Both the position numbers and the translations under genes were made by a program. From NCBI GenBank assembly GCA_977020255.1, contig CDROCS010002749.1, forward strand, positions 1 to 64,000: a DNA stretch of 64,000 nucleotides, written 5' to 3'. The notes beneath the pieces are model-generated. The model did no database searches. It was not told the origin of the DNA and saw only the letters and a program-made list of their open reading frames with translations. The DNA is from Obrimoposthia wandeli (taxonomy: Eukaryota). Positions within the stretch are counted from its first letter, which is position 1. The number at the start of each line of letters is the position of its first letter. Shown here in pieces: positions 17,782 through 41,006 of the stretch.

Positions 17782-19341
17782 ATGAAAAAACTTATTATTA
17801 CTGTCGTTTGTCTGATGTTCGCTGTTGCGCTTGCTGCAAACATAGCAACAACCGCCGTTATCTCAAAAAGTGAAATGGAAAGAGTCATTCTCGAACAGTC
17901 GTATGATAAGGTTTCTTTACTTGCTGTGAATGCACAATATGTCTTAGAGAAATCAGAACAGCCGATTGCTGATATGACTGCATTGGTTAGAAAATTGAAA
18001 AATCGCCCTGACATTTCTTACGCAATTCTAATTGACAAAAATGTGCAAGCAGTTGCTCATAGTGACGAGAAAAAGCAAGATAAAGTGTATAGTGATAAAT
18101 ACACTCTTGCAGGGGCAAAAGAAGGTAAAAAGCAGCATTCTATGTGGTATGCCGAGGTACAAAAAACTTGGGTTTACGATGTGATGGTTCCAGTCTATGT
18201 TGATGGTGCTTTATATGGGACATTTGATGTTGGGGTTCCTGTACTTGAAGTAGAAAGTGTGACGATGTCTATTATTGTTAGTCAAATATTGGCCACACTC
18301 ATGGTTTATCTTATTTGTATTATTATATTACTTTTCCTAATCAACCGTTTTCTGAAACCGATTCATCAGATGCAGCGTGCATTGGAAGATATATCTAAAG
18401 GAGAGGGAGATTTAACGGCTCGATTGCCTGTTTCAGGTAAAGATGAGATTGCTGCCATATCAAATGCATTCAACGTTTTTGTTAGTAAAATACAGGGCAT
18501 AATTAAACAAGTCTCCATTACAGGTTCAGATTTGAATATTACTGCTACTAGCTTAAGAGATCAGTCGAAAATTGCGCTTGATCGAGGTCTAAACCAAAAC
18601 GAAGAAACCTTACTTGCAGTTAGCTCAATGCATGAAATGACAGCGACTGTGAATGAAATAGCTCAAAATGCAGCGACGGCAGCACAAAGTGCCGATAAAG
18701 CGAGTGGTGAGACTCGCTCGAGTGTAACAGTGCTCACTTCAGCTAATAATTCAATAAAATCTCTGGCAATAGAAATGGCTAATATGTCATCAGTCATTTC
18801 TGCGTTAGATGAGAAAACAGAATCAATAGGTTCTATCCTTGTTGTTATTAAGCAAATATCTGAGCAGACAAATTTACTCGCTTTGAATGCTGCTATTGAG
18901 GCTGCCCGCGCAGGGGATGCAGGTCGTGGTTTTGCTGTAGTCGCTGACGAAGTGAGGAATTTAGCAAGTAAAACAGCACTTTCGACAGAACAAATCCAAG
19001 AGATGATTGATGGTTTACAAAGTGAGGCAAAAAGAGCTGTAGCTTCAATGCATAGTAGTAAAGCCCTTACTGATGATGGTTCTAGTGCGACAGGTGAGGC
19101 GCAAACCAGTCTAGAAGAAATTTTTATTCAGATAAACCAAATATCAGATTCAAATACTCTAGTAGCAACGGCGACTGAAGAACAGTCAGCAGTTGCGGTG
19201 CAAATAAAAGCCAAAATGGAGTCGGTAAGTAGCTCTGTAAATGAAGGTTTAGAGGCAAGTAAAGAGCTTGAAAAGACGAGTAGTCAATTAGGGGATTTAT
19301 CAATAACTTTAGACAAGTTAGTAAGAGCCTTTAAAGTATAA
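17782..19341 (+). CDS. Methyl-accepting chemotaxis protein with single-Cache-like sensor domain
   Basis: Two TM segments, HAMP domain, signalling hairpin [34 protein letters not shown]. Confidence 0.92.
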
Positions 19342-20867: not shown

Positions 20868-21518
20868 ATGCAAACAATCTATAACTATGCACAAAGCATA
20901 GTTGCAACAAACGCAGATAAGAAAAAAAGAGATCGTACCAAAGCTGCTATTCAATTTGCGATGTGCCAATTATTGGAAGAAAAGCCGCTATCAACCATAA
21001 CTATTGCGGAGGTGTGCAGCGCTGCAAAAATCGCTCATGGCACTTTTTATATTTACTTCACTGATCGAGAAATGTTAGTTGCCCAGTTGTTGATTGGTTT
21101 TGTCGATTTTATTCAAAATACCATGCTGTTCCAATCGAGCGAAGAGCAAATAGATCCCGTGAAAAAAACCACGGCGGCCTATATAGAGCTGTTTGAGAAA
21201 AACACCGGTTTAATGAAATGCCTACTTAATCATCACGAGGATTTCACGGTACCGAGTGAGCAGTTCCATAAATTAAATGTTATTTGGGCAAAAATAGTGG
21301 TGAGTGCTGCAATTAAAGGAATATCAGAGAACCCTACTAATACAGATCCTGAGGAAGAAGAGCTGTTGCGTAGGGCGTTCGCGCTAGGGGGGATGGTAGA
21401 TCAATATTTAGCAACGGTTTATATCCATAAAGATCCGGTACTGAAAAATTTATCACAAGATAAACAAAAGGTGATTGAGACGCTCTCATTCATTTGGAAG
21501 CAGGGAATGGGTTTATGA
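20868..21518 (+). CDS. TetR/AcrR family transcriptional regulator
   Basis: HTH TITIAEVCSAAKIAHGTFYIYFTDRE. Confidence 0.9.
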   Translation: MQTIYNYAQSIVATNADKKKRDRTKAAIQFAMCQLLEEKPLSTITIAEVCSAAKIAHGTFYIYFTDREMLVAQLLIGFVDFIQNTMLFQSSEEQIDPVKKTTAAYIELFEKNTGLMKCLLNHHEDFTVPSEQFHKLNVIWAKIVVSAAIKGISENPTNTDPEEEELLRRAFALGGMVDQYLATVYIHKDPVLKNLSQDKQKVIETLSFIWKQGMGL

Positions 21519-22819
21519 CATTGCTTAAAAATACAATGCTATTATCGCAAGATGAAATTTCTATTAACCAGCAACTATCCTGGGAAAAGCAAAGCAAGTA
21601 TGTGCTAAATAATTCGCCTTTCTATCAAAATTTATGGAATGGCCTATTACCACCTAAAGATTTATGTGATTTGCCGAACTTGCCTTTATCTGATAAATCT
21701 CAATTACGTATTTCTCAAGAAAACTATCCCCCTTATGGTAATTATCTAGCTGCTCCACGATCCGCCGTGACACGCCATCACCGTACTTCTGGTACGACAG
21801 GACAGGCGATGAATTTGGCTTTATCTGCTCTGGATTGTGAAATAACCCAAGTTGTTGGCGGTCGTAGTCAGCAATCTGCAGGATTAACGCCAGATCACAC
21901 TGTTGTGCATTGTTTGAATTACCAAATGTGGATGGGCGGCGTAACAGATCATTTGACGCTAGAGCGGACAGGTGCAACGGTTGTGCCGTATGGCGTTGGG
22001 GGCACTGAAAAATTGATAGAAACAATTTTAGCCATTGGTATCAATGCAATATCCTGCACGCCATCTTACCCAGCAGTTTTAGAAAAAGTTCTTAAAGATA
22101 AATTTCCAAACCTATCGCCTAAAGATTTAGGCTTAAAGTTAGGGCTGTTTGGCGGCGAAGCCGGCCTTGATGATCCACTTTTGCGAGCAAAAATTCGTAA
22201 CACTTGGGGTATGGAACCGCGTAATGCTAATTATGGCGTATCTGATGTGCTTTCAAATTTCGCCGCTCAGTGTGAGCATGATACTAGCTTACATTTTCTA
22301 GCAGCCGATGTGTTGTATCCGGAATTAATTAATCCAGATAGCGGAGCACATGTAGCCATTAAGGCGGGTAATGAAGGTGAACTTGTGCTGACTCACCTAA
22401 AACGAGAGTGTCAGCCATTAGTGCGATTTAAATCAGGTGACATTATCACTATAGATGAAACAGATCCGTGTCAGTGTGGGCGCGGCGGATTTAGATTTAG
22501 GGTGGTTGGGCGCAGCGACGATATGATAGTTATTCGTGGCCTTAATATTTTTCCGACAATGGTCGCCGCTGTAATTAATGGGTTTGCTGATTTATCCGGA
22601 AACTACACAATTGTACTAGATAAACAGCCGCCATATGATTACTTGCCAGTACAGGTAGAGCTAGCACCCTTTAGCCAAGCTAGTACAAACTTAACTGCAA
22701 ACGTTGAGACAGCAATAAAAACCAAATTGGGTGCCAGTGCTAAAATTACTATTTTGCCCCCCAACAGTTTCCCTGTGACTGAGGGTAAAACCAAGCGAGT
22801 TGTGAGGACATATCAATGA
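21515..22819 (+). CDS. Phenylacetate-CoA ligase (PaaK)-like acyl-CoA ligase
   Basis: HHRTSGTTGQ AMP-binding loop, NYGVSD, PLVRFKSGD, GRSDDMIVIRGLNIFP. ATG 21515 overlaps the TetR stop (ATGA). Confidence 0.85.
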   Translation: MTLLKNTMLLSQDEISINQQLSWEKQSKYVLNNSPFYQNLWNGLLPPKDLCDLPNLPLSDKSQLRISQENYPPYGNYLAAPRSAVTRHHRTSGTTGQAMNLALSALDCEITQVVGGRSQQSAGLTPDHTVVHCLNYQMWMGGVTDHLTLERTGATVVPYGVGGTEKLIETILAIGINAISCTPSYPAVLEKVLKDKFPNLSPKDLGLKLGLFGGEAGLDDPLLRAKIRNTWGMEPRNANYGVSDVLSNFAAQCEHDTSLHFLAADVLYPELINPDSGAHVAIKAGNEGELVLTHLKRECQPLVRFKSGDIITIDETDPCQCGRGGFRFRVVGRSDDMIVIRGLNIFPTMVAAVINGFADLSGNYTIVLDKQPPYDYLPVQVELAPFSQASTNLTANVETAIKTKLGASAKITILPPNSFPVTEGKTKRVVRTYQ

Positions 22820-23580
22820 AAAATTTCACCTACGAATGCGTGCAATCTACTTTAAATGACAAGGGGGTGCGCACTATCGCTTTAAACCGTCCCGCTAGTT
22901 TGAATGCAATGAATCGGCAATTAATTGAAGATGTATCAACCGCTTTTGATGATGCGAATAAAGATCCGAAAACTTTAGTAATCATCTTTACGGGCGTAGG
23001 ACGAGCGTTTTGTGCCGGTGATGATCGTGAGCAGCATGTTCACCCAGAAAACGAAGCACAAGCACGCAGCTTAGTAGATGCAATCCAGCGGGCTACACAG
23101 GCAATTACGTTTGGTGCAAAGCCTGTTGTCGGCGCAATTAACGGGTGGGCAGTTGGCGGTGGGTTTGAATGGGCGATTAACTGTGATTTTCCAATCTGGG
23201 GAGAAAGCGCCAAGGCGTTTTTTCCAGAAGTCTCTTTGAATTTGTTTGTTACTGGTGGCGTCACATCCTTGCTACCGGCTTTAGTTGGATTGAATAAGGC
23301 GCGGGAAATGTTGATGCTTGGCGAAAGATATAACGCAAATGAGCTTTTAAAAGCAGGGGTTGCGTGGCGAGTTTCAACAGATGAGAAACTCTTGGAGGAT
23401 GCGAGAAACGTTGCACAAAAGCTCGCTTTACTCCCTCCTTTATCATTGCACGCCATGAAGCGTGTTCTAAATCAAACCGCATCAAGTAATATCAATGCAG
23501 CGATTTCGTTGGAGAGTGAAGCAACCATCAGCGGATTTATGGATCCAAAAACAACCCAGTTATTAACCGATTTTTCTTGA
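22816..23580 (+). CDS. Enoyl-CoA hydratase/isomerase (crotonase) family protein
   Basis: LNRPASLNAMN, RAFCAGDD, VGAINGWAVGGGFEWAINCD, FFPEVSL. ATGA overlap with the ligase stop. Confidence 0.88.
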   Translation: MKNFTYECVQSTLNDKGVRTIALNRPASLNAMNRQLIEDVSTAFDDANKDPKTLVIIFTGVGRAFCAGDDREQHVHPENEAQARSLVDAIQRATQAITFGAKPVVGAINGWAVGGGFEWAINCDFPIWGESAKAFFPEVSLNLFVTGGVTSLLPALVGLNKAREMLMLGERYNANELLKAGVAWRVSTDEKLLEDARNVAQKLALLPPLSLHAMKRVLNQTASSNINAAISLESEATISGFMDPKTTQLLTDFS

Positions 23581-23981
23581 AAAATAACAAGTTAAAATCT
23601 CGATGACTAAAGCATAGCTTGAGCTTTCAATAAAGCGACGTAAAAGATCGATTAAACTCCTCAAGCATTACAGAGCCGTATGATAAATGCTCCATATAAA
23701 CGGATTATTCAATTAATTTCGATAATGAACCATTAAGGTGATAGTCTCAAATTGAATTATGAATCGGATGCATTGAACGCTATATTTTCACGGTGACAGC
23801 TTTGAGTTCCCGTATCAGATTATCGTTAAGCTAAGATAAGCTCATGAAAAGTGTCCACCTGCTTAGATCAATTTTTATCTCGCTTTTTTTAGAATACATA
23901 TATAAATTAAAATATTGGAGGTATAATTAATTAAGATTGTATATAAATCGACCACCAACCAATAGTCATATGAAGGGACTA

Positions 23982-24536
23982 ATGATGTCTGCACAAGATA
24001 CAAAAATTGAAAAAAATACAGATGAGCAAGTGATTGAGCAAAAGGCCCCATCTGAACTCGATCAGTTAAGAAATATCGTTTTTGGTGCAGCCAAAGAAGA
24101 CTTAGAATCACAGCTCAGTGAATTACGAAGTGACGTGCAGCAACAATTCAAAGAGGCTGCACAGCTACAAGAACAGCAGATAGAGGCACTAAAAATCGCC
24201 CTAGATGAAAATGTAATTAAACTTGACCAGCGCATTACAGTAGTGGATACACAGCACGAAAATAGATCAGCTGAGTTATCCGAATACGCTGATCAGATTG
24301 CTGCTGAAGTAGAATCAAACGATACGAATAGCAGACAACAGGATGATGAAATTCGTAAAACCCTCGATTTTGAAGTAGATAGCTTGACCAAAAAATTTAC
24401 CAAGCAACATAATCAAACTATCGATTTACTTAATCAAGTTAAAAAGGATCTTAATAGCTCCAAGACTGATAGAAAAACACTGGCTAAACTTCTTGCTACC
24501 GTCGCAAGTAATCTTGAAACCGATGAAGACAACTAA
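23982..24536 (+). CDS. Hypothetical all-helical/coiled-coil protein; first gene of the small-GTPase operon
   Basis: Heptad-like Q/E/L-rich sequence with ELDQLRNIVFG and KTDRKTLAKLLATVA motifs. RBS AAGGGA precedes ATG 23982. Confidence 0.8.
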   Translation: MMSAQDTKIEKNTDEQVIEQKAPSELDQLRNIVFGAAKEDLESQLSELRSDVQQQFKEAAQLQEQQIEALKIALDENVIKLDQRITVVDTQHENRSAELSEYADQIAAEVESNDTNSRQQDDEIRKTLDFEVDSLTKKFTKQHNQTIDLLNQVKKDLNSSKTDRKTLAKLLATVASNLETDEDN

Positions 24537-24544
24537 TATTGCCA

Positions 24545-26518
24545 ATGGAAACTAATAATACTTCCACTAGTGATGACGCCTTAGCATTAGAATCTTTTAA
24601 GAAAATTATTCTAGGTAAGAATAGTCAGCATATTAGAGATGTCATAGAGGAAGATGCAAGAGAATTGGTTAGTAAGGTTTTAACGGAAGCTCTTCATGAT
24701 AGGGAGAAAGCTGATGGTACTGTAAGCCAAATTCTTACACCCGTAGTAGAAATGGCAGTAGAAAAGTCAGTCACCGATAATAAAGACTTGTTTATCGGTT
24801 ATTTATATCCTTTAGTCGGCGGCTTAGTTAGAAAATCTGTTAGTTCTTTTTTAGCAAGTTTAGTTGAACAAACTAACCAGTTGTTAGAAAGTAGTTTTAC
24901 AATAAAGGGAATCTATTGGCGGTTTAAAGCCTGGCAAGCAGGCCTTTCATATTCACAATATGTCATTAAACAGAATTTTTCCTTTAGAGTAGAGCAAATA
25001 CTGCTGATTCATACCGAAACAAGTATGTTGCTCAATACTGTGATCAAGGATAAAACACAAGCGACTGACGGCGATATGGTTTCTGCCATGTTAAGTGCTA
25101 TCAATGATTTTGTTGGTGACTCTTTCGAACAAGAAAATACAGATAAGCAAAGCTTAGATGAAATCAAAACAGACGATTTTACCTTGCTCATCAAGCAGGG
25201 ACCACAGGCGATGCTCGTCGCTGCTATTACGGGAAACCCACCCGCTGATATTGGGGAAAAACTACAACTAAATCTTGAAACCATTCATAAGATTTATGGC
25301 GCAGAACTCCATGATTTTGATGGGGATTCGCAGGCCTTTGCGAATACTGATCAACAATTGAATAAATGCTTAGTTGAGCGGCAAAAGCAATCAGAGGTTA
25401 CTGGTAAGAAACGACCTTGGTTAGCGATGATTTTACTGTTGGTTTTTGCTATCGTATGTGGCTATTTCTTTTCAAAGCAATGGCTACTGGATTCGAAAAT
25501 TCAGCAAATCAATGCGCTTGATTCAGTGCCTGGAATTGTTTTATTAGATACACATGCATGCTCAGAAAATATTTGTATTGAATTAATGCGCGACCCCTTG
25601 GCAGAACCCGCATTATCCTGGCTTAAAAAGGCAAACTTAACTGGCACTGGCATTGATATAATTGAACACACTTATCGTTCAGCAGATACTAAATTAATAG
25701 GAAATATTCAGCTTAGTAAGATAAAGTCTCTCACTAGCGCGCCGGGCATTATTTTACTTGATGCCTTCATATGTGAAGAAAAAATTTGTATTGAGTTATT
25801 GCGTGATCCCATTGCTGAATCTGCATTATTATGGTTAAAAAAAGCCAACTTAGCCGGTACTGAGTTAGTTGTTAGTGAACGTGCCTATCGATCTTTAGAT
25901 GAAAATTTAATCGATATGCGCCTTTACTTGTTGATTAAAGGCTACCCTGGATTATCGTATGCTAATGGAGTTTTTCAGGGCCAGCTAAAACAATCTGTAC
26001 TCACCAAGTTTAAACGAGTGGTGAGTGCATTACCTGATAAATTGGATTTAACCTTATTGTTCTCGAAGCTTGAAATAATCCCTAGGACATTATCATCAGA
26101 TTATAAAATTAATCGAGCCCTATTAGATCAGAGTATTACAAAATTACAAAACACTACTATAATCTTTGATGAAGGCGAAAGTCATTTGCGCCCTTTCTCT
26201 ATCAAGAAACTAAAACTTGTTAGTGAAAATATTACTGAAATACTCGATCTTGCTGAGCTACTGGATTACAACATTGAAATTATTGTGATGGGGGCGAGCA
26301 GTTCAACAGGTAATAAAGCTTTTAACGAGCAACTGAGCCGTAAACGAGCAGCCTCAGTCAGAAAGAACCTCATTAAGAACAAGTTAAATAAAGATATAGT
26401 GCAGGCGATTGGACTTGGAAGTATCAATGAAAAAGCTCGCCGTGTTATGTTCTCCGTGGTTAAACTTACTGCGCAAAACAGCGATTTGGATGTAGATATA
26501 ATGGCGCCGATAAGATGA
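24545..26518 (+). CDS. Membrane protein: helical N-terminus, putative longin/roadblock-like domain, single TM, duplicated periplasmic repeat, OmpA-like C-terminal domain
   Basis: TM WLAMILLLVFAIVCGYFF. OmpA-like motif IVMGASSSTGNKAFNEQLSRKRAASVRKNL...GLG...ARRVMF. Start is ATG 24545 or TTG 24539. Confidence 0.8.
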   Translation: METNNTSTSDDALALESFKKIILGKNSQHIRDVIEEDARELVSKVLTEALHDREKADGTVSQILTPVVEMAVEKSVTDNKDLFIGYLYPLVGGLVRKSVSSFLASLVEQTNQLLESSFTIKGIYWRFKAWQAGLSYSQYVIKQNFSFRVEQILLIHTETSMLLNTVIKDKTQATDGDMVSAMLSAINDFVGDSFEQENTDKQSLDEIKTDDFTLLIKQGPQAMLVAAITGNPPADIGEKLQLNLETIHKIYGAELHDFDGDSQAFANTDQQLNKCLVERQKQSEVTGKKRPWLAMILLLVFAIVCGYFFSKQWLLDSKIQQINALDSVPGIVLLDTHACSENICIELMRDPLAEPALSWLKKANLTGTGIDIIEHTYRSADTKLIGNIQLSKIKSLTSAPGIILLDAFICEEKICIELLRDPIAESALLWLKKANLAGTELVVSERAYRSLDENLIDMRLYLLIKGYPGLSYANGVFQGQLKQSVLTKFKRVVSALPDKLDLTLLFSKLEIIPRTLSSDYKINRALLDQSITKLQNTTIIFDEGESHLRPFSIKKLKLVSENITEILDLAELLDYNIEIIVMGASSSTGNKAFNEQLSRKRAASVRKNLIKNKLNKDIVQAIGLGSINEKARRVMFSVVKLTAQNSDLDVDIMAPIR

Positions 26519-27009
26519 TTAATAAGAAAATTTGTATGCTGGGCCCTTCTGCTGTTGGAAAAACAAGTTTAGTAAAGCGTTATGTGAATGGTATTTTTTC
26601 TGATAAATATCTAACTAGTATTGGGGTGAAAATAGATAAAAAGGCGATCTCATTAGACGGCGAAAATATTCAGCTTATGCTTTGGGACATTGAAGGTGTA
26701 GATCGCTACTGCGGATTTAACCCTAAGTTTATTAGAGGCGCTGCGGTTGCTATTATAGTCGTTGACCAATCTCGAATACAGTCCTTACAAGATGGTTTTG
26801 AAATTAGCCGTTTGGTTAAAGCTGAAAAGGATATTCCTATTATTTTGGTTATTAATAAAAGCGATCTAAAGCCTGCTGATGATTGGCACTGTCTATTAGA
26901 AAATGAAGATCAATCTCTATTCCAAGCGCAATATTTCACAAGTGCCAAATTGAACAGCGGTGTTGAAGAAATGTTTTTTGATGCGGCTAGAATATCAATT
27001 AATAAGTAA
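26515..27009 (+). CDS. Ras/Rab-like small GTPase (prokaryotic Rup-type)
   Basis: 164 aa with G1 GPSAVGKT, G2 region YLTSIG, G3 LWDIEG, G4 NKSD, G5 TSAK. ATGA overlap with the OmpA-protein stop. Confidence 0.92.
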   Translation: MINKKICMLGPSAVGKTSLVKRYVNGIFSDKYLTSIGVKIDKKAISLDGENIQLMLWDIEGVDRYCGFNPKFIRGAAVAIIVVDQSRIQSLQDGFEISRLVKAEKDIPIILVINKSDLKPADDWHCLLENEDQSLFQAQYFTSAKLNSGVEEMFFDAARISINK

Positions 27010-27032
27010 TTTTAAAGATAGAGATACCGATA

Positions 27033-29159
27033 ATGCAGGCTTCACTACTTCAGAAATTAGGGATACTCGATTGCGCCGTGTTAGAAAAGAAATCGGACGC
27101 TACATTTAGCCTAATTCATTCAAATAAAGCATGGCTAAGCGCTATTTTGCCAGACGGTTTTGATAGTGGAGTTATTCTTGAGAATGGTATTTCGGATTAT
27201 TTAAATGACTTCTTATACGATGCCATTCCGTTTTGGGATAGGAATATCGATGGAAAGATAAATTCAGGAATTTGGACTGAGCAGACCTCTAGCGGACTGT
27301 GGAGGTTAGAAGCCTCTGCGATAACAAATGATAATGCACATTATCTTGTTATTATTAATATCGCCAATGAGCACAATAGCCGCCAAAGATTGCTGCAGGT
27401 TGCTAGAGAATTATTGGTTTCAAATGATCAAATATTAGAGCAGCACCAATTAATGCATGCACGTATATCATCACTAACATATAGCCCTGATAGTGAATCT
27501 GCCCCACACACTGTGATAGAAGAGTTAATAAGACATACTGAATTTGGTATTGCTGTCGTAGATGTTAATATGCAACCGCTAGAGCAAAATCCGGCTCTGT
27601 TTCAGATGTTTGAGCTTAAAAGTGATACTAAAGCGCAACCAATTAGTATCATATTAGATCTTTGCCAGCGTCAATTTCCTGAATTTACAAGAATATTCTC
27701 AAGACAAGAGAAATGGACTGGTGAGTTGTATTGGGTCAAGCCTGATGCCATAAGTCGCTGGCTTCAACTGACTATTTGTCCAGTTAAGAGTGATACCAAT
27801 GAACTCTCAAATTGGCTGTTTTTGTTAACGGATATTAGCCGCGAAAAGTATCTTCAACAAAGTAATGAGAAGCTCATTTATTTCGATGTAATGACTGATT
27901 TACCCAATAGGAAATACTTTTGGCATAGCTTGGAAAGTGCCATAGATAAAAATTCTTCATTTTTTGTACTACGTATGAATATCAAGCATGTACAGCGTAT
28001 CAATGAAGCTTATGGTTACTCTATTGGTGACGAAGTTATTATAGAAGTTGTGTCACGGCTAAAATTATTTATTGACAATGGCTCCATTTTTGCTCGGCTT
28101 GGCGGTAATGAATTCGCGATGATTTTCTATTTGTCAGAGCAAAAAGAATGTGAACATGTTGCAAAACAGCTGATTGAAATAGCATGTAAGCCTATAAGGA
28201 TTTCCAGCCAATTACAGTTTCAAATTAAACTCGACATAGGTGTAGCACATTACCCAAATGATGAAGTTTGTGCAGAAGAACTCATTCGATATGCGGATTT
28301 AGCGGCTTTTTTTGGTAAGGAGAAAGAGAAAAATAGTATTCACTTTTACTCAGAAAATCTTAAAAATCAATCGATATTGCGTATTGAATTAGAAGCATCT
28401 TTGCGCAATGCTATAGAGCAGAAGCAATTTGAACTCTATTTACAGCCAATATATGATCTTAATACAGGCGTAGTCATCAAAGCGGAAGCACTGATTCGCT
28501 GGAACAAACCGGGTGTTGGATTAGTTGGACCTGATGAGTTTATCCATATAGCTGAAGAAACGGGTTTAATCGTCGCAATTGGGCAGTGGGTTATTGATGA
28601 GTCTATTCGGTTGCTTGAAATATTACACAATCAAAATAGACACATTACCTTAGCAATCAATTTATCTCCGGTACAAATTCAAGATCAACACTTATTAAGT
28701 ACTATCAAAAATAGTGTTTCCCACAGTAAAATTAATGTCGCCTCTTTTCTTCAATTAGAGTTAACGGAAGGCGTGTTAATCGAAGATTTTGACAAAATAC
28801 AAGTCTTCTTAAGCGAAGTGAGAAAACTTGGCATTACCACTGCTATCGATGATTTTGGTACGGGGTATAGTTCTCTATCATATTTACAGAAGCTACCAAT
28901 TGATCACTTAAAAATTGATCGCTCATTTATTCAAGCATTAAATATCGATAATAGCGAGAATGCAATTGTGCTTGCTATTATCGCGATGGCAGAAAGCTTA
29001 AAACTTGGAGTGATAGCAGAAGGCGTAGAAAATGAGATGCAACAAGAGTTTTTAAGAATTAATAATTGCCAGTCTGCACAGGGGTATTTATTTAGCCGGC
29101 CCCTACCATTTGCTCATTTCATTGAATCATCTAGCTTGTGGCCTCTAACGATTAGTTAG
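27033..29159 (+). CDS. PAS/GGDEF(degenerate)/EAL c-di-GMP phosphodiesterase with an unrecognised N-terminal input domain
   Basis: EAL motifs intact (KAEALIRW, NLS, ELTE, DDFGTGYSSLSYL, KIDRSF, EGVE, QGY). The GGDEF signature reads GGNEF (28101-28115). Confidence 0.9.
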   Translation: MQASLLQKLGILDCAVLEKKSDATFSLIHSNKAWLSAILPDGFDSGVILENGISDYLNDFLYDAIPFWDRNIDGKINSGIWTEQTSSGLWRLEASAITNDNAHYLVIINIANEHNSRQRLLQVARELLVSNDQILEQHQLMHARISSLTYSPDSESAPHTVIEELIRHTEFGIAVVDVNMQPLEQNPALFQMFELKSDTKAQPISIILDLCQRQFPEFTRIFSRQEKWTGELYWVKPDAISRWLQLTICPVKSDTNELSNWLFLLTDISREKYLQQSNEKLIYFDVMTDLPNRKYFWHSLESAIDKNSSFFVLRMNIKHVQRINEAYGYSIGDEVIIEVVSRLKLFIDNGSIFARLGGNEFAMIFYLSEQKECEHVAKQLIEIACKPIRISSQLQFQIKLDIGVAHYPNDEVCAEELIRYADLAAFFGKEKEKNSIHFYSENLKNQSILRIELEASLRNAIEQKQFELYLQPIYDLNTGVVIKAEALIRWNKPGVGLVGPDEFIHIAEETGLIVAIGQWVIDESIRLLEILHNQNRHITLAINLSPVQIQDQHLLSTIKNSVSHSKINVASFLQLELTEGVLIEDFDKIQVFLSEVRKLGITTAIDDFGTGYSSLSYLQKLPIDHLKIDRSFIQALNIDNSENAIVLAIIAMAESLKLGVIAEGVENEMQQEFLRINNCQSAQGYLFSRPLPFAHFIESSSLWPLTIS

Positions 29160-29417: not shown

Positions 29418-30767
29418 ATGCAACTAACAGAAAAAGCATTACTAACTAACGCTTTACTTATTTCAATTTCTACCCCAGAGCTTAAAGGTGATGAGGCAAT
29501 TGAATCATTAGCTGAACTTGCCCGTTTAGTGACGACACTTGGGTTTAAAGTGGTTGGCTCCCAATCGCAAAAGCTGAGTTCAACTAAAAGAGTTAATGTG
29601 CTAGGTTTAGGAAAGCTTGCAGAGATTGCGCAGCTTACCGGTAACCAGGGGGTGCTAGAAGGTTCAGAAGAGTATGAAGACCTCACTAACGTAGATATTA
29701 CCGGAATACCTTCAACTATACCGTCTGATAATCTTTCGTTTGGCTGTGCTGATGTGGTTATATTTGATTGTGATTTAAGCCCATCTCAGCTACGCAATGT
29801 CGAGAATCAATTAGGCGTAGAGGTATTTGACCGTACTGGCGTTATTATTGAAATATTTAGTCGCCATGCCCGTACTAAAACAGCGAAGCTACAAGTTGAA
29901 ATAGCTCGCCTTAATTATGTAGCACCAAGGCTTCGTGAATCATCATGTGGTGATAAAGAACGCCAAATGGGTAAAGGGGCTGGTGAAACAACGCTAGAGC
30001 TAAACCGACGTAAAGTACGTGATCAATTAGCAGAACTTAGGCACGAATTAATTAGTGTTCAAGGTGAGATGAAAGGGCGACGTACACAGCGCTCTGAGCT
30101 TTTTTGTGTCGCTTTGGTGGGATATACCAATGCGGGCAAGTCATCAATGATGCGCGCGATTACCGGTAGTAATGTCGAAGGTGAAAACAAGCTTTTCGCG
30201 ACACTTGATACCACCGTTCGCGCGTTGTATCCCGAAACGCAACCGCGAGTGTTGGTCTCAGACACTGTCGGTTTTATTAAAAAATTACCGCACGATTTAG
30301 TTGCCTCATTTCATTCAACTTTAGCAGAAGCACACGATGCTTCATTGTTGTTATATGTGGTTGATGCCTCTGACCCTTCGTTTCGTGCACAATTAGATGT
30401 TGTGCACCAAGTATTAGGAGAAGTCGGGGTAGCGGATAGTAAAAAGTTATTGGTACTCAATAAATCAGACCTGCTTAGCACTGCGCAAAAACAAGCACTA
30501 ATGGAAGAGTTCCCAGATGCTATGCTGACATCTGCTAATGATCCTGATGATGTAAGTAAATTGCACCAATATATTGTTGGTGTTGCGCAGGACGAGATGA
30601 TTGAAGATGAAATCATTGTTCCTTATACAGCTAAAGGTATCATAGGTGAAATTCGTTCGAGTATGAGTGTTACTAAGGAAGAATATGAATACGATCATAT
30701 TAAGCTCACAGTGCGCTCAAACTCAATTAACTTAGCAAGGCTTAAAAAACGGATGCTGAATGTATAA
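29418..30767 (+). CDS. hflX: Ribosome-splitting GTPase HflX (stand-alone copy)
   Basis: DRTGVIIEIFSRHARTKTAKLQVEIARL, GAGETTLELNRR, ALVGYTNAGKSS, LFATLDTT, DTVGFI. Confidence 0.92.
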   Translation: MQLTEKALLTNALLISISTPELKGDEAIESLAELARLVTTLGFKVVGSQSQKLSSTKRVNVLGLGKLAEIAQLTGNQGVLEGSEEYEDLTNVDITGIPSTIPSDNLSFGCADVVIFDCDLSPSQLRNVENQLGVEVFDRTGVIIEIFSRHARTKTAKLQVEIARLNYVAPRLRESSCGDKERQMGKGAGETTLELNRRKVRDQLAELRHELISVQGEMKGRRTQRSELFCVALVGYTNAGKSSMMRAITGSNVEGENKLFATLDTTVRALYPETQPRVLVSDTVGFIKKLPHDLVASFHSTLAEAHDASLLLYVVDASDPSFRAQLDVVHQVLGEVGVADSKKLLVLNKSDLLSTAQKQALMEEFPDAMLTSANDPDDVSKLHQYIVGVAQDEMIEDEIIVPYTAKGIIGEIRSSMSVTKEEYEYDHIKLTVRSNSINLARLKKRMLNV

Positions 30768-31013: not shown

Positions 31014-32894
31014 TTAAACTTTAAACTGGTTCAACACTTCACTTTGTTTATTTGTAGAGCTAGTCATACTTCCACATAATTCAGATTGCTCTTGAGCATG
31101 TTGAGACACTGTTTGGCTAAGATTACGTATATTAGTGGTATTGCGGTTGATTTCTTCACTGGTACTACTTTGCTCTTGCGCTGAACTAGCTATGTGAATG
31201 GTGATGTCATTAATTTCAGAAATAGAGTTGCGGATGTTTGTCAATATATCTTCAGCTTTGGTTGCTTTATCATTGGTAGAACTAGCAAGGGTTCTACTTT
31301 GCTCAATTTTATTAACGGCTTCCTTAACGCCTTCTTGGAGTTGACCAATAATCAAGCTAGTTTCATTCGTGGATTGCTGAGTTCTACCTGCCAGTGCTCT
31401 TACTTCATCGGCCACAACGGCGAAGCCCCTGCCCATATCACCTGCTCTGGCAGCCTCTATAGCGGCATTTAAAGCGAGTAAGTTTGTTTGCTGGGCGATA
31501 CTTGTAATAGAAGTGAGGACTGATTCAATATCATCACTGTACTTTACTAATAAGTTAACTGTTGTAACCGTTTCATCCATGTCATCTACTAGTTGGGCTA
31601 TGGATTGGGAAGTTTCTTTGACAATGCTATTACCTTGCGAAGCCTCTGAGTCCGCCGATTGTGCCGCTGTCGCTGCCTTTTGGGCGTTTGATGCTACTTC
31701 TTTAGCAGAATATGACATCTCAGTCATTGCAGCGGCTAACATATCGAGTTCATTGAGTTGCTTTGTTAAATCAATGGCTGTTTTTGAGGCTGCTTCTGAG
31801 CTTTCAGAAGTCTTGTGGTTTATTTCTTCCGAAATAGACTTAACATCAATAATAATACTCTGTAAGTATTGAATAAACTGGTTGAAGTCAGTTGACACGT
31901 GGGCGAATTCATCTTTTGAAGAGATAACTAAGCGTTTTGTTAGGTCTCCTTCACCACTATTGATTTCAACTAGTGATTTTTGTAAATCATCTAGTGGCTT
32001 AAATAGTTTCCTAACGGTAAAAAACAGCGCTGTAGCGGTTAATAACACAATTAAAATAGTACCAACAATAGCAGCAAAACCAAAAGAGTTTGCTTCTTTC
32101 AGAACTTTGCTCTTATCCAGGATAACTCCGATATGCCAATCAACTCCCTTTAAGTTTTCAAGGGGTTGGAATGCACTAAATACTTTACTACCTGCAGCAA
32201 CACCCTCTTGTAAAATCGGTTTGATTTGCGGAGGGGAGCTTTCAAAAAGATCGCTGATTTGTTTTCCATTTAACTCGATATTCGGGTGGGATATGATTTT
32301 CCCTTTGGAATTGATTAAAAAGGCATACCCTGTATTGTTAAAATTAACTTGATTAATAGTATCTGCGATACTTTTAAGGCTTAAGTCTCCGCCAAAAGCA
32401 CCATTAAAAGTACTATTATCATTCAAATTAGCAACAGCAGATATTAAAATTTCTTTAGTTGAGGAATCTTCGTATGGTTCAGTTAATATAGCAACTTGGC
32501 TGTTTTTCGCTATATTATACCAAGGGCGCTTGCGAGCATCCCATCCTTCTGGCGCCCAGCTTGGATCATTTGTGATTGGTTTTCCATCTGCTTCTAAGCC
32601 TCCGAACATAAGGATGAAATTATCGTCTAATATGGGGTTGTTGAAGGCTTGTTGAATACTTTTTGCATTGAAATCTCCGTCGATAGTTTTTGCTACCATA
32701 TCGATTAATGCTAACTTTCCGTTTAACCAAGAAGTAATTTGCTCGGAAATAACCTTAGACGTCTCAGCCACATTTTTGGAAGCTCTGTCGTATAATGCAT
32801 CTTTTACTGTGTTGTATTGAAACCAAGAAAATAAAGAGAAGGTGATGATGACAATTACTGATGAGATCAGTACTACTTTATGGGATATCTTCAT
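31014..32894 (-). CDS. Methyl-accepting chemotaxis protein with dCache sensor (PctA-like)
   Basis: WDARKRPWY...[10 protein letters not shown] dCache motif, HAMP domain, [34 protein letters not shown]. Confidence 0.93.
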
Positions 32895-34170: not shown

Positions 34171-35655
34171 CTAAACTTTGAATTGGCTGGTTAAGGTTTG
34201 TAAATTATTAACATGATCGTCTAGCTGATTGGCTTTAACTTTTATTTGATTGATAAGGCCATTGCTTTCTTGTCCGCTACTGACAATACCATTGATATTA
34301 ACGTCTAATGAAGAGGTCACACTGCTTTGTTCTTGCACACTGGTGGAAATTTGCAATGAAGTATCATTGATATCGTCACTGGCTGAAATTATCTTTTTAA
34401 TGAACTCAACTGAATGCTGCATCATTTCAGTCGTTTCTTCTCCTTTTGTTTTACTGTTTTGTACCACTAATACAGCTGAGCTCGTTCCTTGTTGTAACTC
34501 AGAAATCATTTGGCTAATTTCTTCGGTGCTTTGCTGAGTTCGGCTAGCTAAAGCTCTTACTTCATCGGCAACTACCGCAAAACCGCGCCCTTGATCTCCG
34601 GCTCGAGCCGCTTCAATGGCGGCATTAAGCGCAAGCAAATTAGTTTGCTCAGCAATAGCTTTAATCACATCGATAACACTAGCCATTTGATCAACCGTGG
34701 TGGCGAGTAAACTTATCACTTGGCTGGCATTGTCTAGGTCAGTAGAAAGTTCATTCACTGATGACATCGATTTATTGACCACAAGACCGACTTCATTGGC
34801 TTGTTCTTTTGCTTCAAATGCTGACTTGGATGATTGCTGAGATGTTTGTGAAATATCTTTTGTACTGGCTGCCATTTCGGTGATCGCTGCTGCGAGCATG
34901 TCTATTTCAATATATTGTTTTTCAAATAATGCGTTAGCATCGCTGACATCTGATTTGACTGCACTTGAGGTATCACTTATAACCTGAGTTGTGGTGATTA
35001 TGGTATTAATCATAGCTTGAGTTTTATTAAAAAAATGATTAATTTGCCCAGCTAATTCACCCATTTCATCTTGGGTGCTTATTTCTAATCTTTTTGTTAA
35101 GTCGCCATCACCATGTGCAATATCTGTAACAGCAAGAATAACTTTTTTTAACGGATTAGTGACAATGAGACGAGTAAGCATAAATAATATAAGCACGAGT
35201 AAAACGTCTACAAGTACCACCCCAATAATTATTTGTATTAATGCAGCATGAGTTTTAAGATTAATTGCTTGTTGATCTATGCTGATCACAATGTCACCAA
35301 CAGGACTTTCTTCCCCATATTCGCGATAAACAAGAGGGTGCTTCAACTCTAGTCCCTTTATTCCTTCATTATGTTGGGTATATTTGACTTCACCATCTAA
35401 TGTTTTTATTTCAATACCGTAAACATAGGGGGACTCTAATTCTGATGAGCCAATTTTGACTATTTGTTCAGATAAATCCATCCATATAGCCGCAGGCAAA
35501 TTCAGTTTTAACCTATCGGATGCTAAGGTAATACTTTTATTTGCCTCGACTAATAAAGATGACTTTACAACTTTATAGTCATAGCCCCCTTTAGCAATTA
35601 AAACGACACTGACCAAAATGGTCGACATTACGATTAATCTAAATTTAATACTCAA
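34171..35655 (-). CDS. Methyl-accepting chemotaxis protein with short periplasmic domain
   Basis: Two TM segments, HAMP domain, [38 protein letters not shown] start. Confidence 0.92.
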
Positions 35656-40998: not shown

Positions 40999-41006
40999 GT
41001 TTTTTC

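What the first reader, a model, noticed from the sequence alone, without database searches (positions are those of the whole stretch)
23982..29159. Four-gene operon built around a eukaryote-like Rab/Ras small GTPase: candidate envelope-to-c-di-GMP signalling system
Seen: four co-directional genes with gaps of 8 bp, -4 bp (ATGA overlap) and 23 bp. They encode a coiled-coil protein, a single-pass membrane protein ending in an OmpA-like domain, a 164-aa GTPase with all five Ras-superfamily G motifs in Rab-like wording, and an EAL phosphodiesterase. Established: OmpA-like domains bind peptidoglycan; Ras-family GTPases are rare in gammaproteobacteria; the characterised bacterial example is MglA with its roadblock GAP MglB. 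From memory, a second prokaryotic family (Rup) was defined bioinformatically and remains functionally uncharacterised. Inference: the membrane protein senses the cell wall or envelope, sets the nucleotide state of the GTPase, and the GTPase switches the PDE, giving a bacterial G-protein cascade that controls c-di-GMP (motility/biofilm). The neighbouring chemoreceptors fit a motility-related role.
Basis: partly seen in the sequence, partly recalled or inferred. Interest (0 to 1): 0.92.

Follow-up and report, generated by a model that had tools for sequence, protein, structure and literature searches.

The report
Known-type Rab-like GTPase signalling operon
The four genes are real and belong together, but they are a new example of the "Group 1 Rup" small-GTPase signalling system described by computer analysis in 2014 and never tested at the bench; here it most likely links the cell envelope to breakdown of the second messenger c-di-GMP.

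Summary
Four co-directional genes lie at 23982-29159 with gaps of 8, -4 and 23 bp.

- Gene 1 is a helical protein with no database match.
- Gene 2 is a single-pass membrane protein ending in an OmpA-like domain.
- Gene 3 is a 164-aa Rab-like GTPase with all five G motifs but no catalytic Gln.
- Gene 4 is a composite protein (N-domain, PAS, degenerate GGDEF, intact EAL), not a plain EAL enzyme.

This neighbourhood was already described as the "Group 1 Rup" system (Wuichet & Sogaard-Andersen 2014, PMC4316618). Their Table S2 lists the Marinomonas mediterranea locus, whose membrane protein matches gene 2 at E 1.4e-171. No experimental study turned up.

Synteny is very strong. At least 577 matching stretches were found in species genomes, and 77 of the 80 fetched loci have the GTPase directly downstream. 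Outputs are interchangeable: GGDEF-EAL, hybrid histidine kinase, HD-GYP type, PP2C and cyclase.

New here:
- The cytoplasmic "unknown" domain of gene 2 models as a Roadblock/longin fold, the fold of MglB and of eukaryotic Rab GEFs.
- The N-domain shared by the outputs is PAS-like, followed by a signalling helix carrying a near-invariant Q..RE motif.
- Gene 1 looks like an apolipoprotein-type amphipathic helix protein rather than a heptad coiled coil.

The chemoreceptor neighbours are not conserved.

The parts
23581..23981 (+). Upstream intergenic region with a TATAAT at 23922-23927 and a Shine-Dalgarno-like AAGGGA at 23973-23978. It is the presumed promoter region of the operon.
   Evidence: Read directly from the sequence. 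The consensus scan found no + strand promoter here above its threshold, so the promoter is not established.
23982..24536 (+). ORF1 (the 'DUFY' of the 2014 paper): a 184-aa cytoplasmic all-helical amphipathic protein. It has a conserved N-terminal motif LRxI[VL]FG and a C-terminal motif KTDRKxLAxLL.
   Evidence: no Pfam hit. (alignment A4: R30, G35, K161, D163 invariant). (hydrophobic period 3.62; power 103 against 2.4 at 3.50). (profile hits ApoA-IV at 1.4e-13 and ApoA-I at about 1e-9). (no transmembrane segment).
24545..24949 (+). ORF2 aa 1-135: an N-terminal LRxLxLG-type motif followed by a highly conserved helical region of unknown function.
   Evidence: invariant E48 A49 D52 R53 Y88 P89 L90 G92 R96 T110 N111 W125 R126. 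(predicted helices, low pLDDT). (the motif aligns with the ORF1 N-terminus, hhalign E 0.0026).
24950..25324 (+). ORF2 aa 136-260: the Roadblock/longin-like alpha/beta core (the heart of 'DUFX'). It is the candidate platform, GEF or GAP, for the GTPase.
   Evidence: the AF2 model has the order a-b-b-a-b-b-b-a, with pLDDT 65-80 in this part; all 50 best Foldseek PDB hits are Roadblock/longin proteins, including TRAPP 3cue_A at 2.4e-4, Asgard Roadblock3 9jue (TMt 0.62), Mon1-Ccz1, LAMTOR and MglB 6hjm_E (TMt 0.64); the best sequence-profile PDB hit is 9jue_D, but only at E 0.18; no Pfam Robl_LC7 hit.
25415..25483 (+). ORF2 single transmembrane helix (about aa 291-313), with the N-terminus in the cytoplasm.
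   Evidence: Kyte-Doolittle 19-residue maximum of 2.4 at aa 292, the only window above 1.6. KKR precedes the helix.
25523..25912 (+). ORF2 periplasmic module of about 60 aa, present as two tandem copies (aa 327-385 and 398-456). Most relatives have one copy.
   Evidence: 63% identity between the copies, E 1e-26; the alignment shows a single copy in roughly 587-aa relatives. No Pfam or BON similarity was found.
26165..26431 (+). ORF2 C-terminal OmpA-like (peptidoglycan-associating) domain, aa 541-629.
   Evidence: PF00691, 2.6e-09, 37.7 bits against a cut-off of 27.2. N594 L597 S598 R601 A602 are invariant, but the position that is Asp in most relatives is Ser here.
26515..27009 (+). ORF3: the Group 1 Rup small GTPase (164 aa). 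It is Rab-like, with G1-G5 complete and Val in place of the catalytic Gln after DxxG.
   Evidence: Position 62 is I, E, N, V or T and never Q in 77 family members; 164 aa is the length listed for the Marinomonas Rup.
27033..27479 (+). ORF4 aa 1-149: the PAS-like N-domain shared by all detected output types, plus a long J-alpha-like helix. The helix carries near-invariant Q122, A124, R125 and E126 (codons 27396-27410).
   Evidence: an iterated HMM finds the domain in 67 ORFs; alignment A3. AF2 pLDDT 79.6; the top Foldseek hits are LOV/PAS-histidine kinases and short LOV proteins. Q in 44/45, A in 44/45, R in 41/45, E in 38/45.
27549..27839 (+). ORF4 second PAS domain (aa 173-269). The match is weak.
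   Evidence: PAS_9 at 4.4e-05, 24.1 bits, below the cut-off of 27.
27879..28334 (+). ORF4 GGDEF domain with the degenerate signature GGNEF. It is predicted to have no cyclase activity.
   Evidence: 7.2e-28. GGNEF in the window; the motif reads GGDEF in only 21 of 51 aligned rows (those over 650 aa, which include a few non-GGDEF outputs).
28395..29102 (+). ORF4 EAL domain with all the usual catalytic motifs. It is the predicted c-di-GMP phosphodiesterase.
   Evidence: 2e-67. EAL, NLSP, ELTEG, DDFGTGYSS, KIDRSF, AEGVE and QGYLF are all present; the best NCBIfam matches are c-di-GMP phosphodiesterases, all below their equivalog cut-offs.

Best explanation
This is a chromosomal Group 1 Rup ('Rup1') signalling operon.

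Shown:
- The four genes form a unit conserved across phyla.
- The GTPase is Rab-like, has an intact nucleotide-binding site and lacks its own catalytic Gln.
- The last gene carries an intact EAL domain and a degenerate GGDEF.

Inferred mechanism:
1. ORF2 spans the inner membrane. Its OmpA-like end sits at the peptidoglycan. Its periplasmic module(s) and this tether report some envelope state.
2. ORF2's cytoplasmic Roadblock/longin-like domain, probably as a dimer, is the platform that sets the nucleotide state of Rup. A GEF role, as in the eukaryotic longin/roadblock Rab and Rag GEFs, is most likely.
3. ORF1, an amphipathic helical protein that shares an N-terminal motif with ORF2, is a membrane-proximal accessory of that platform.
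4. Rup-GTP docks on the PAS-like N-domain of ORF4 and, through the long signalling helix, switches the EAL phosphodiesterase. This changes c-di-GMP.
5. The exposed Q122/R125 pair on that helix may supply the missing catalytic residue(s) in trans. The effector would then also terminate the signal.
For: Identity with the 2014 system:
- The text and Table S2 of PMC4316618 describe the order DUFY, OmpA:DUFX, Rup, plus an output with an N-terminal invariant Gln.
- The Marinomonas mediterranea MMB-1 protein P0013 matches ORF2 at 1.4e-171.

Synteny:
- At least 577 matching stretches in species genomes.
- 61 of 80 loci have all four parts. 14 more have ORF1, ORF2 and the GTPase. Two are cut by contig ends.
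- 5248 clusters at 50% identity carry the ORF2 core domain.

Other support:
- Interchangeable outputs behind one shared N-domain.
- GTPase motifs, with Gln absent in 77/77.
- Roadblock/longin fold of the ORF2 core.
- PAS-like fold plus helix for the output N-domain.
- Q122, A124, R125 and E126 near-invariant, lying at positions that flank the predicted hydrophobic seam of the helix.
- EAL intact, GGDEF degenerate.
- Single transmembrane helix with N-in topology.
- Tight or overlapping gene spacing, with only one weak terminator-like match inside the unit (in ORF2, 24929-24943; 5-bp stem) and fewer such matches than shuffled sequence gives.
Against: - No protein-protein contact, nucleotide dependence, GEF or GAP activity, or effect on c-di-GMP has been measured for any member.
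- The ORF2 model is only moderately confident (mean pLDDT 57). The Roadblock assignment has no significant sequence support: Pfam Robl_LC7 is not hit and the best PDB profile hit has E 0.18.
- MglB-type Roadblock proteins act as GAPs, so the GEF assignment is a guess.
- The conserved Q and R could serve helix signalling rather than catalysis.
- The peptidoglycan-binding Asp is not conserved in this window's OmpA-like domain.
- 14 loci have downstream genes in which the N-domain is not detected. The profile comparison with them is inconclusive (E 0.021, probability 2%).
Confidence: 0.5

Rival explanations
1. Spatial landmark rather than sensor. ORF2 is a static, peptidoglycan-anchored platform at a defined site such as a pole or the septum. 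It recruits Rup, and through it the phosphodiesterase, so the system localises c-di-GMP turnover. This would parallel MglB/MglA polarity or Ragulator/Rag, with no envelope signal being transduced.
For: Roadblock/longin proteins characteristically act as localised platforms for small GTPases; the hit list includes MglB, LAMTOR and TRAPP. An OmpA-like domain is an anchor, not a known ligand sensor. ORF1 resembles scaffold or membrane-surface helical proteins.
Against: The periplasmic part is variable: the module is duplicated here and some relatives carry BON domains. That suggests adaptation of an input. The outputs are soluble enzymes of global second-messenger and phosphorelay pathways. No localisation data exist.
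Confidence: 0.2
2. Reverse flow. The PAS-containing fourth protein is the sensor and regulator (GAP or GEF) of Rup. Rup-GTP then acts on ORF2 and ORF1 to change the inner membrane-peptidoglycan connection or envelope properties. This resembles the proposal that the GTPase is the output of the actinobacterial conservon.
For: The fourth proteins carry PAS sensor folds and a conserved exposed Q/R pair that would suit a GAP. In the conservon the histidine kinase is regarded as the input (PMC4316618 section 18; PMC13343842).
Against: What varies between lineages is the enzymatic end of the fourth protein: EAL, HD-GYP type, cyclase, PP2C, or histidine kinase with REC and Hpt. That is the pattern expected of outputs. 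ORF1 and ORF2 have no recognisable enzymatic effector domain.
Confidence: 0.15
3. Anti-phage defence module related to Zorya, that is, a MotA/MotB-like anchor plus effectors.
For: PADLOC gives weak hits: ORF1 to the ZorA tail (4.9e-4 and 7.6e-4) and the ORF2 OmpA part to ZorB (1e-6).
Against: The ZorA hits cover only the helical tail. ORF1 has no MotA/ExbB membrane channel and no transmembrane segment. The ZorB hit is the generic OmpA/MotB domain. The GTPase and ORF4 have no PADLOC hit. Outputs are housekeeping-type signalling enzymes, not nucleases or toxins. Base composition matches the surroundings, and the neighbours are metabolic, chemotaxis and cell-division genes.
Confidence: 0.03

Closest known systems
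Group 1 Rup system (Wuichet & Sogaard-Andersen 2014, PMC4316618)
   Same: Same four components in the same order: helical DUFY, DUFX-TM-OmpA, a roughly 164-aa Rup lacking the G3 Gln, and an output with an N-terminal domain bearing a conserved Gln. The system is directly orthologous to the listed Marinomonas mediterranea locus.
   Different: Nothing essential differs, so this is a new member. Local peculiarities are a duplicated periplasmic module, a GGNEF-type GGDEF, and Ser at the usual OmpA Asp. This analysis adds fold assignments (Roadblock/longin for DUFX, PAS-like for the output N-domain) and further output types (HD_5, PP2C, cyclase) that the paper does not mention.
MglA / MglB (with RomR-RomX) polarity module of Myxococcus xanthus
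   Same: A bacterial Ras-superfamily GTPase is paired with a Roadblock-fold regulator. MglB is among the fold hits of ORF2 (6hjm_E TMt 0.64, 6h5b_B).
   Different: The GTPase here is Rab-like, with a canonical DxxG and no intrinsic Gln, and all 60 best PDB hits are Rab/Ypt, not MglA. The Roadblock-like domain is embedded in a membrane protein rather than being a separate MglB gene. The output is enzymatic signalling rather than motility-machine assembly.
Actinobacterial conservon / actinobacterial G protein system (CvnA-D; PMC13343842)
   Same: [quoted passage not shown] The 2014 paper proposed it as the analogue.
   Different: Its GTPase is MglA-type (Group 2 MglA). Its Roadblock protein (CvnB) is soluble. 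It has a DUF742 protein, no OmpA-like anchor and no shared PAS-like N-domain.
Eukaryotic Rab/Rag GTPases with longin/roadblock GEF platforms (TRAPP, Mon1-Ccz1, Ragulator)
   Same: A Rab-like G domain is encoded next to a protein whose predicted fold best matches TRAPP Bet5/Trs23, Mon1-Ccz1 and LAMTOR subunits.
   Different: There is no detectable sequence homology to these GEFs. This is a single bacterial membrane protein, not a multi-subunit complex. GEF activity is untested.
YfiBNR and other envelope-to-c-di-GMP systems; GTP-activated EAL proteins with a degenerate GGDEF (Caulobacter PdeA/CC3396 type)
   Same: An OmpA-like envelope protein sits upstream of a c-di-GMP enzyme, as YfiB does. 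A composite degenerate GGDEF plus active EAL architecture is shared. The resemblance rests on my own knowledge of these systems.
   Different: YfiB is an outer-membrane lipoprotein that acts through periplasmic YfiR on a cyclase. No GTPase is involved there. Here the relay is cytoplasmic, through a small G protein.

Membership tests
Group 1 Rup system | Single-domain Ras-superfamily GTPase under 240 aa with eukaryote-like G1-G5 motifs | tested here: met
   164 aa. Ras PF00071 at 7.9e-26. G1-G5 are invariant across 77 family members. The best PDB relatives are Rabs.
Group 1 Rup system | No catalytic Gln after DxxG in G3 | tested here: met
   WDIEGV in the window. Position 62 is I, E, N, V or T in the family and Q in 0 of 77.
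Group 1 Rup system | Neighbourhood of DUFY (helical), then DUFX with TM and OmpA, then Rup | tested here: met
   ORF2 matches the Marinomonas mediterranea MMB-1 protein at 1.4e-171, and that locus is listed as Rup Group 1 'DUFY>OmpA:DUFX>Rup>'.
Group 1 Rup system | Fourth gene is a signalling output (GGDEF/EAL or histidine kinase) whose N-terminal region has an invariant Gln | tested here: met
   ORF4 is GGDEF-EAL. Q122 is conserved in 44 of 45 N-domains and is the only column at 90% or more in the 76-protein alignment.
Group 1 Rup system | GTPase branches inside the Rup Group 1 clade in a tree with MglA, Rup2 and eukaryotic references | not tested
Placement rests on the orthologous neighbourhood and the motifs.
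Group 1 Rup system | Not coupled to a stand-alone MglB gene | tested here: met
   Neither the operon nor the flanking genes give a Robl_LC7 Pfam hit. A Roadblock-like fold is nonetheless predicted inside ORF2.
MglA family | MglA-type G domain, usually next to mglB | tested here: not met
   The G3 motif is a canonical DxxG, the 60 best PDB hits are all Rab/Ypt, and there is no adjacent MglB gene.
Roadblock/LC7-longin superfamily (ORF2 aa 136-260) | Alpha/beta sandwich with the order a-b-b-a-b-b-b(-a) | tested here: met
   The AF2 secondary-structure order matches. All 50 best Foldseek PDB hits belong to this superfamily, with E 2.4e-4 to 3e-3 and TMt up to 0.67. The model's confidence is moderate (core pLDDT 65-80).
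Roadblock/LC7-longin superfamily (ORF2 aa 136-260) | Significant sequence-profile match to a Roadblock or longin family | tested here: not met
   No Robl_LC7 hit among 46 members; one member hits Intu_longin_3 at 0.049. The best PDB profile hit is Roadblock 9jue_D, at only E 0.18.
Roadblock/LC7-longin superfamily (ORF2 aa 136-260) | Binds and regulates a small GTPase (as GAP or GEF) | not testable with these tools
   This needs biochemistry or multimer modelling. Only single-chain prediction was available.
OmpA-like peptidoglycan-binding domain | Pfam OmpA above the gathering score | tested here: met
   37.7 bits against a cut-off of 27.2.
OmpA-like peptidoglycan-binding domain | The conserved Asp and Arg that hold the diaminopimelate carboxylate (from my knowledge of Pal, OmpA and MotB structures) | tested here: inconclusive
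   The NxxLSxxRA motif with R601 is invariant. The position that is Asp in most relatives (G-A-S-D) is Ser in the window and Thr in Marinomonas.
Active EAL c-di-GMP phosphodiesterase | EAL, N, ExxE, DDFGTGYSS (loop 6), K, E and Q catalytic or metal-binding motifs | tested here: met
   All are present in the window, and most are present in most of the 47-51 aligned full-length relatives.
Active GGDEF diguanylate cyclase | GG[DE]EF active-site signature | tested here: not met
   The window reads GGNEF.
Zorya (ZorAB) defence | A ZorA MotA/ExbB-type membrane channel, ZorB, and effector genes | tested here: not met
   There are only weak hits to the ZorA tail and to the generic OmpA part of ZorB. 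ORF1 has no transmembrane segment. ORF3 and ORF4 have no PADLOC hit.

The most novel reading that the evidence does not exclude
The bacterial GTPases closest to eukaryotic Rab/Ras (Rup1) are regulated by a membrane-embedded Roadblock/longin platform (DUFX) acting as their GEF. Their effectors carry a PAS-like docking domain whose signalling helix supplies a Gln/Arg pair in trans as a built-in GAP. The Rab-type logic of 'longin/roadblock GEF plus trans-finger GAP' would then have existed in bacteria, wired to c-di-GMP, phosphorelay and cAMP outputs and to the cell envelope. This would revise the 2014 view that Rup proteins have no MglB-like partner.
Probability: 0.3. Interest if true: 0.8.

Novelty: new member of a known kind. 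Interest (0 to 1): 0.45.

Why it matters
Rup1 proteins are the bacterial GTPases that group with eukaryotic Rab/Ras/Rho/Ran in published trees, yet none has been studied experimentally.

This survey finds the system in at least 577 matching stretches of species genomes and in about 5,000 protein clusters, across many phyla, and always as the same module with swappable outputs. It is therefore a widespread, uncharacterised class of bacterial signal transduction.

The fold assignments made here turn a neighbourhood observation into specific, cheap experiments: a Roadblock/longin platform in the membrane protein, and a PAS-like docking domain with an exposed Q/R pair in the outputs. If they hold, they bear on how GTPase-regulator pairs of the eukaryotic type arose.

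For this particular window the practical meaning is modest. It is one more typical member, predicted to lower c-di-GMP in response to an unknown envelope-related cue.

Tried and rejected
- **Chemoreceptor link.** The window has three MCP genes, but homologues of the flanking genes are essentially absent from the 80 related loci: MCP in 1, HflX-like in 6 and on the other strand. Rejected as evidence of function.
- **Defence system.** PADLOC gave only generic weak hits. Rejected.
- **Sequence-level proof of the Roadblock assignment.** Pfam scans of 46 core domains at E up to 5 and profile searches of PDB gave nothing significant. Only the fold search supports the assignment.
- **BON identity of the periplasmic module.** Longer relatives carry Pfam BON. 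The window-type module gives no Pfam hit and no hhalign similarity to those BON regions (E 0.25). Left unassigned.
- **Shared N-domain in the Pyrinomonadaceae 292-aa PAS proteins and the Mariprofundaceae cyclase.** hhalign gave E 0.021 at 2% probability, although a PFL motif and a conserved Gln line up. Inconclusive.
- **Exact look-up of the window's proteins.** Not in the collection, so the organism could not be named. The closest locus is a Nitrincolaceae/Oceanospirillaceae MAG at 72% identity.
- **RNA and transcription signals.** Rfam found no RNA family in the window. No intrinsic terminator was found after ORF4.
- **DNA-level repeat search in the duplicated module.** It found nothing. The duplication is visible only at the protein level.
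- **Literature searches for experimental work on Rup systems.** They returned only the 2014 paper and phylogenetic mentions.

Full report
**1.

Four ORFs lie on the + strand at 23982-24536, 24545-26518, 26515-27009 and 27033-29159. The gaps are 8, -4 and 23 bp.

- ORF1 has no Pfam or NCBIfam match.
- ORF2 ends in an OmpA-like domain (aa 541-629, 37.7 bits against a cut-off of 27.2). It has one transmembrane helix at about aa 291-313, preceded by KKR, so the first 290 residues are cytoplasmic and the rest periplasmic.
- ORF3 is a 164-aa Ras-superfamily GTPase (Ras 7.9e-26, Roc 1.2e-23).
- ORF4 is not a bare EAL protein. It has an unassigned N-terminal 170 residues, a weak PAS, a GGDEF domain and an EAL domain.

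The operon's GC content (0.36-0.39) matches most of the surrounding window. Only one weak terminator-like match (a 5-bp stem at 24929-24943, inside ORF2) falls within the unit, and such matches are no more frequent than in shuffled sequence. A TATAAT lies at 23922-23927 and a Shine-Dalgarno-like AAGGGA precedes the ORF1 ATG.

**2. The system is already described**

Wuichet and Sogaard-Andersen (Genome Biol Evol 2014/2015, PMC4316618) defined the Rup family. They reported that Group 1 Rup genes sit in a four-gene neighbourhood:

- a predicted coiled-coil cytoplasmic protein;
- a protein with a conserved unknown domain, a membrane helix and a C-terminal OmpA domain;
- the Rup GTPase, which lacks the G3 glutamine;
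[quoted passage not shown] They speculated that this residue is supplied in trans.

Their Table S2 lists 29 such loci. One is Marinomonas mediterranea MMB-1, written 'DUFY>OmpA:DUFX>Rup>' with a 164-aa Rup. The OmpA/MotB protein of that strain (P0013) matches ORF2 at E 1.4e-171.

The window meets every neighbourhood and motif criterion. Its G3 motif reads WDIEGV, and none of 77 family GTPases has Gln at that position. Q122 of ORF4 is the conserved glutamine: 44 of 45 in the N-domain alignment, and the only column at 90% or more across 76 output proteins.

I found no experimental work on any Rup1 system. Later papers use Rup1 only as a phylogenetic group clustering with eukaryotic Rab/Ras/Rho/Ran and Asgard RasL.

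**3. Synteny and distribution**

Of these, 577 were confirmed by tblastn.

The 80 loci kept span several groups:

- Alteromonadales, Marinomonas, Hahella, Kangiellaceae and Cellvibrionaceae;
- Acidobacteriota and Gemmatimonadota;
- Binatia, Desulfomonile, Thermodesulfobacteriota and Mariprofundaceae.

HMMs built from the family gave these counts:

- 61 loci have all four parts in the same order.
- 14 have ORF1-like, ORF2-like and GTPase genes followed by a gene in which the shared N-domain is not detected.
- 1 has the N-domain gene elsewhere.
- 1 lacks a detectable ORF1.
- 2 are cut by a contig end just after ORF2.
- 1 has no callable ORF2.

A profile of the ORF2 core finds 5248 clusters (50% identity) at E up to 1e-3, and 3738 at E up to 1e-10, among 1.84 billion representatives.

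Among the 76 proteins scanned (the gene after the GTPase in 75 related loci, plus the window's own ORF4), Pfam finds:

- GGDEF+EAL in 48;
- histidine kinase in 8, of which 7 are hybrid with REC and Hpt;
- HD_5 (the HD-GYP type) in 4;
- PP2C in 2;
- a class III nucleotide cyclase in 1;
- short PAS-only proteins in about 6.

By contrast the flanks are not conserved. An MCP homologue is nearby in only 1 of 80 loci. The three chemoreceptor genes of this window therefore say nothing about function.

**4. What the parts look like**

*GTPase.* G1 (GxxxVGKT), a switch I Thr/Ser, WDxxG, NKxD and TSAK are invariant or nearly so. The 60 best solved relatives are all Rab/Ypt proteins, with Rab21 at 1.1e-21. 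The residue equivalent to Ras Gly12 is Ser or Phe, as in Rabs. The protein can therefore bind and probably exchange nucleotide, but it should hydrolyse GTP poorly on its own.

*ORF2 cytoplasmic part.* This region is the most conserved of the protein (mean column identity 61% in 42 sequences).

- An AlphaFold2 model (mean pLDDT 57; 65-80 over aa 145-256) predicts long helices for aa 9-132. An alpha/beta unit follows with the order a-b-b-a-b-b-b-a.
- All 50 best Foldseek matches in the PDB are Roadblock/longin proteins: TRAPP subunits (3cue_A, 2.4e-4), Asgard Roadblock3 (9jue, TMt 0.62), Mon1-Ccz1, LAMTOR/Ragulator, sigma-adaptin/zeta-COP and MglB (6hjm_E, TMt 0.64).
- A sequence profile of this core against all PDB sequences returns only two matches. 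The best is again the Roadblock protein 9jue, but at a non-significant E of 0.18.
- Pfam's Robl_LC7 is not hit.

I therefore treat the assignment as a fold-level inference of moderate confidence. If correct, it qualifies the 2014 statement that Rup proteins are not linked to MglB-like partners. The partner would be fused into the membrane protein.

*ORF2 periplasmic part.* A module of about 60 residues with an invariant G, RD and W occurs twice in tandem here (aa 327-385 and 398-456; 63% identity, E 1e-26). It also occurs twice in the closest locus, L001. Most relatives of about 587 aa have one copy. Its fold is unassigned. Longer relatives carry BON domains at this place, but no similarity to them could be shown. 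The OmpA-like domain keeps the NxxLSxxRA motif. It has Ser where most relatives have the Asp that, from what is known of Pal, OmpA and MotB, contacts the peptide stem.

*ORF1.* The family has a conserved N-terminal motif (LRxI[VL]FG) and a C-terminal motif (KTDRKxLAxLL).

- Its hydrophobic periodicity is 3.62 residues, with almost no power at the heptad value of 3.50.
- Its profile hits exchangeable apolipoproteins: ApoA-IV at 1.4e-13, ApoA-I at about 1e-9, and apolipophorin III.
- It is better described as an amphipathic-helix repeat protein, possibly one that binds a membrane surface, than as a classical coiled coil. Compositional similarity may inflate those E-values.
- The N-terminal motif recurs at the N-terminus of ORF2 (hhalign E 0.0026 over 31 columns).

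*ORF4.* Residues 1-149 form the domain that is common to GGDEF-EAL, histidine-kinase and HD_5 outputs. An iterated HMM finds it in 67 ORFs.

- The model (pLDDT 79.6) is a PAS-like five-stranded fold followed by a helix of about 40 residues.
- Its best structural matches are LOV/PAS-histidine kinases and short LOV proteins with their J-alpha helices.
- The most conserved stretch of the whole domain lies on that helix: L121, Q122, A124, R125, E126.
- Reading 121, 124 and 128 as the hydrophobic seam puts Q122 and R125 on the exposed flank. They would then be free to contact a partner.
- The GGDEF signature is GGNEF, so no cyclase activity is expected. All the EAL motifs are intact. The best NCBIfam matches are c-di-GMP phosphodiesterases, below equivalog cut-offs.

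**5. Most likely mechanism**

The following are shown: the module, its conservation, its swappable outputs, the state of the catalytic motifs, and the topology.

The flow of information is inferred:

1. ORF2, tethered to or near the peptidoglycan, reports an envelope state through its membrane helix to a cytoplasmic Roadblock/longin platform.
2. The platform, perhaps with ORF1, sets the GTP/GDP state of Rup. I favour exchange-factor activity. The eukaryotic longin/roadblock partners of Rab and Rag are mostly GEFs. An MglB-style GAP relies on catalytic residues of the GTPase itself, and Rup lacks them.
3. Rup-GTP binds the PAS-like N-domain of ORF4 and toggles the EAL domain through the signalling helix.
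4. The conserved Q/R pair may complete the GTPase active site, as the 2014 authors suggested for the Gln. The effector would then also be the off-switch.

I give the whole chain about 0.5. That this is a Rup1 signalling module is close to certain.

Three rival readings remain:

- A landmark or localisation role rather than sensing (0.2).
- Reversed flow, with the PAS protein as the input (0.15).
- A Zorya-like defence system (0.03), supported only by generic weak PADLOC hits.

**6. Verdict**

The cascade was proposed in 2014 for exactly this gene set, so the window holds a new member of a known, experimentally untouched kind.

The added value of this analysis is threefold: the size and breadth of the family, three further output classes, and two fold assignments that give direct biochemical tests.

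Noticed in passing
window 23982-24536 (ORF1) and alignment A4: The 'coiled-coil' protein has a hydrophobic period of 3.62 rather than 3.5. Its family profile hits exchangeable apolipoproteins (ApoA-IV at 1.4e-13). It may be a membrane-surface amphipathic-helix protein.
   Followed up: partly
window 24040-24090 (ORF1 N-terminus) and 24590-24625 (ORF2 N-terminus): ORF1 and ORF2 share a short N-terminal motif, L-x-x-[LI]-R-x-[IL]-[ILV]-[FL]-G (hhalign E 0.0026 over 31 columns). It could be a common docking peptide.
   Followed up: partly
window 25523-25912: There is a tandem duplication of a periplasmic module of about 60 aa in ORF2 (63% identity at protein level, no DNA repeat left). It is shared with locus L001. 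Marinomonas relatives carry a second copy at a different place, and longer relatives have BON domains here.
   Followed up: partly
window 26290-26310 (ORF2 aa ~583-589): The OmpA-like domain has Ser (G-A-S-S) where most relatives have the Asp of G-A-S-D. The NxxLSxxRA motif is intact. Peptidoglycan binding may be altered.
   Followed up: no
protein P0128: This 2171-aa protein has three copies of the Roadblock-like core plus CARDB and DUF5915 matches. It is either an unusual multi-copy relative or a mis-called gene.
   Followed up: partly
window 17782-19341 (+), 31014-32894 (-), 34171-35655 (-): Three methyl-accepting chemotaxis protein genes (sCache, dCache and sensor-less types) lie within 20 kb. 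They are not conserved next to the operon in relatives.
   Followed up: yes
window 20868-23580: A TetR-family regulator, a PaaK-like AMP-forming ligase and an enoyl-CoA hydratase have overlapping ends and look like a separate small catabolic operon just upstream.
   Followed up: no
window 29418-30767: A stand-alone HflX-like GTPase gene lies 259 bp downstream of ORF4. An HflX-like gene also lies 2-4 kb downstream, on the opposite strand, in 6 of 80 related loci.
   Followed up: partly
window 13342-17046; 40189-41804: The window also holds metH (B12-dependent methionine synthase) and minC-minD. The context is ordinary chromosomal sequence. No Rfam family reaches threshold anywhere in the window.
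   Followed up: no
loci L044, L053, L060, L069, L071, L080 (about 10.2-11.1 kb in each): In Pyrinomonadaceae the gene after the GTPase is a 292-aa protein with a PAS domain and an N-terminal region that has a PFL motif and an invariant Gln. It is not detectably the same N-domain (hhalign probability 2%).
   Followed up: partly
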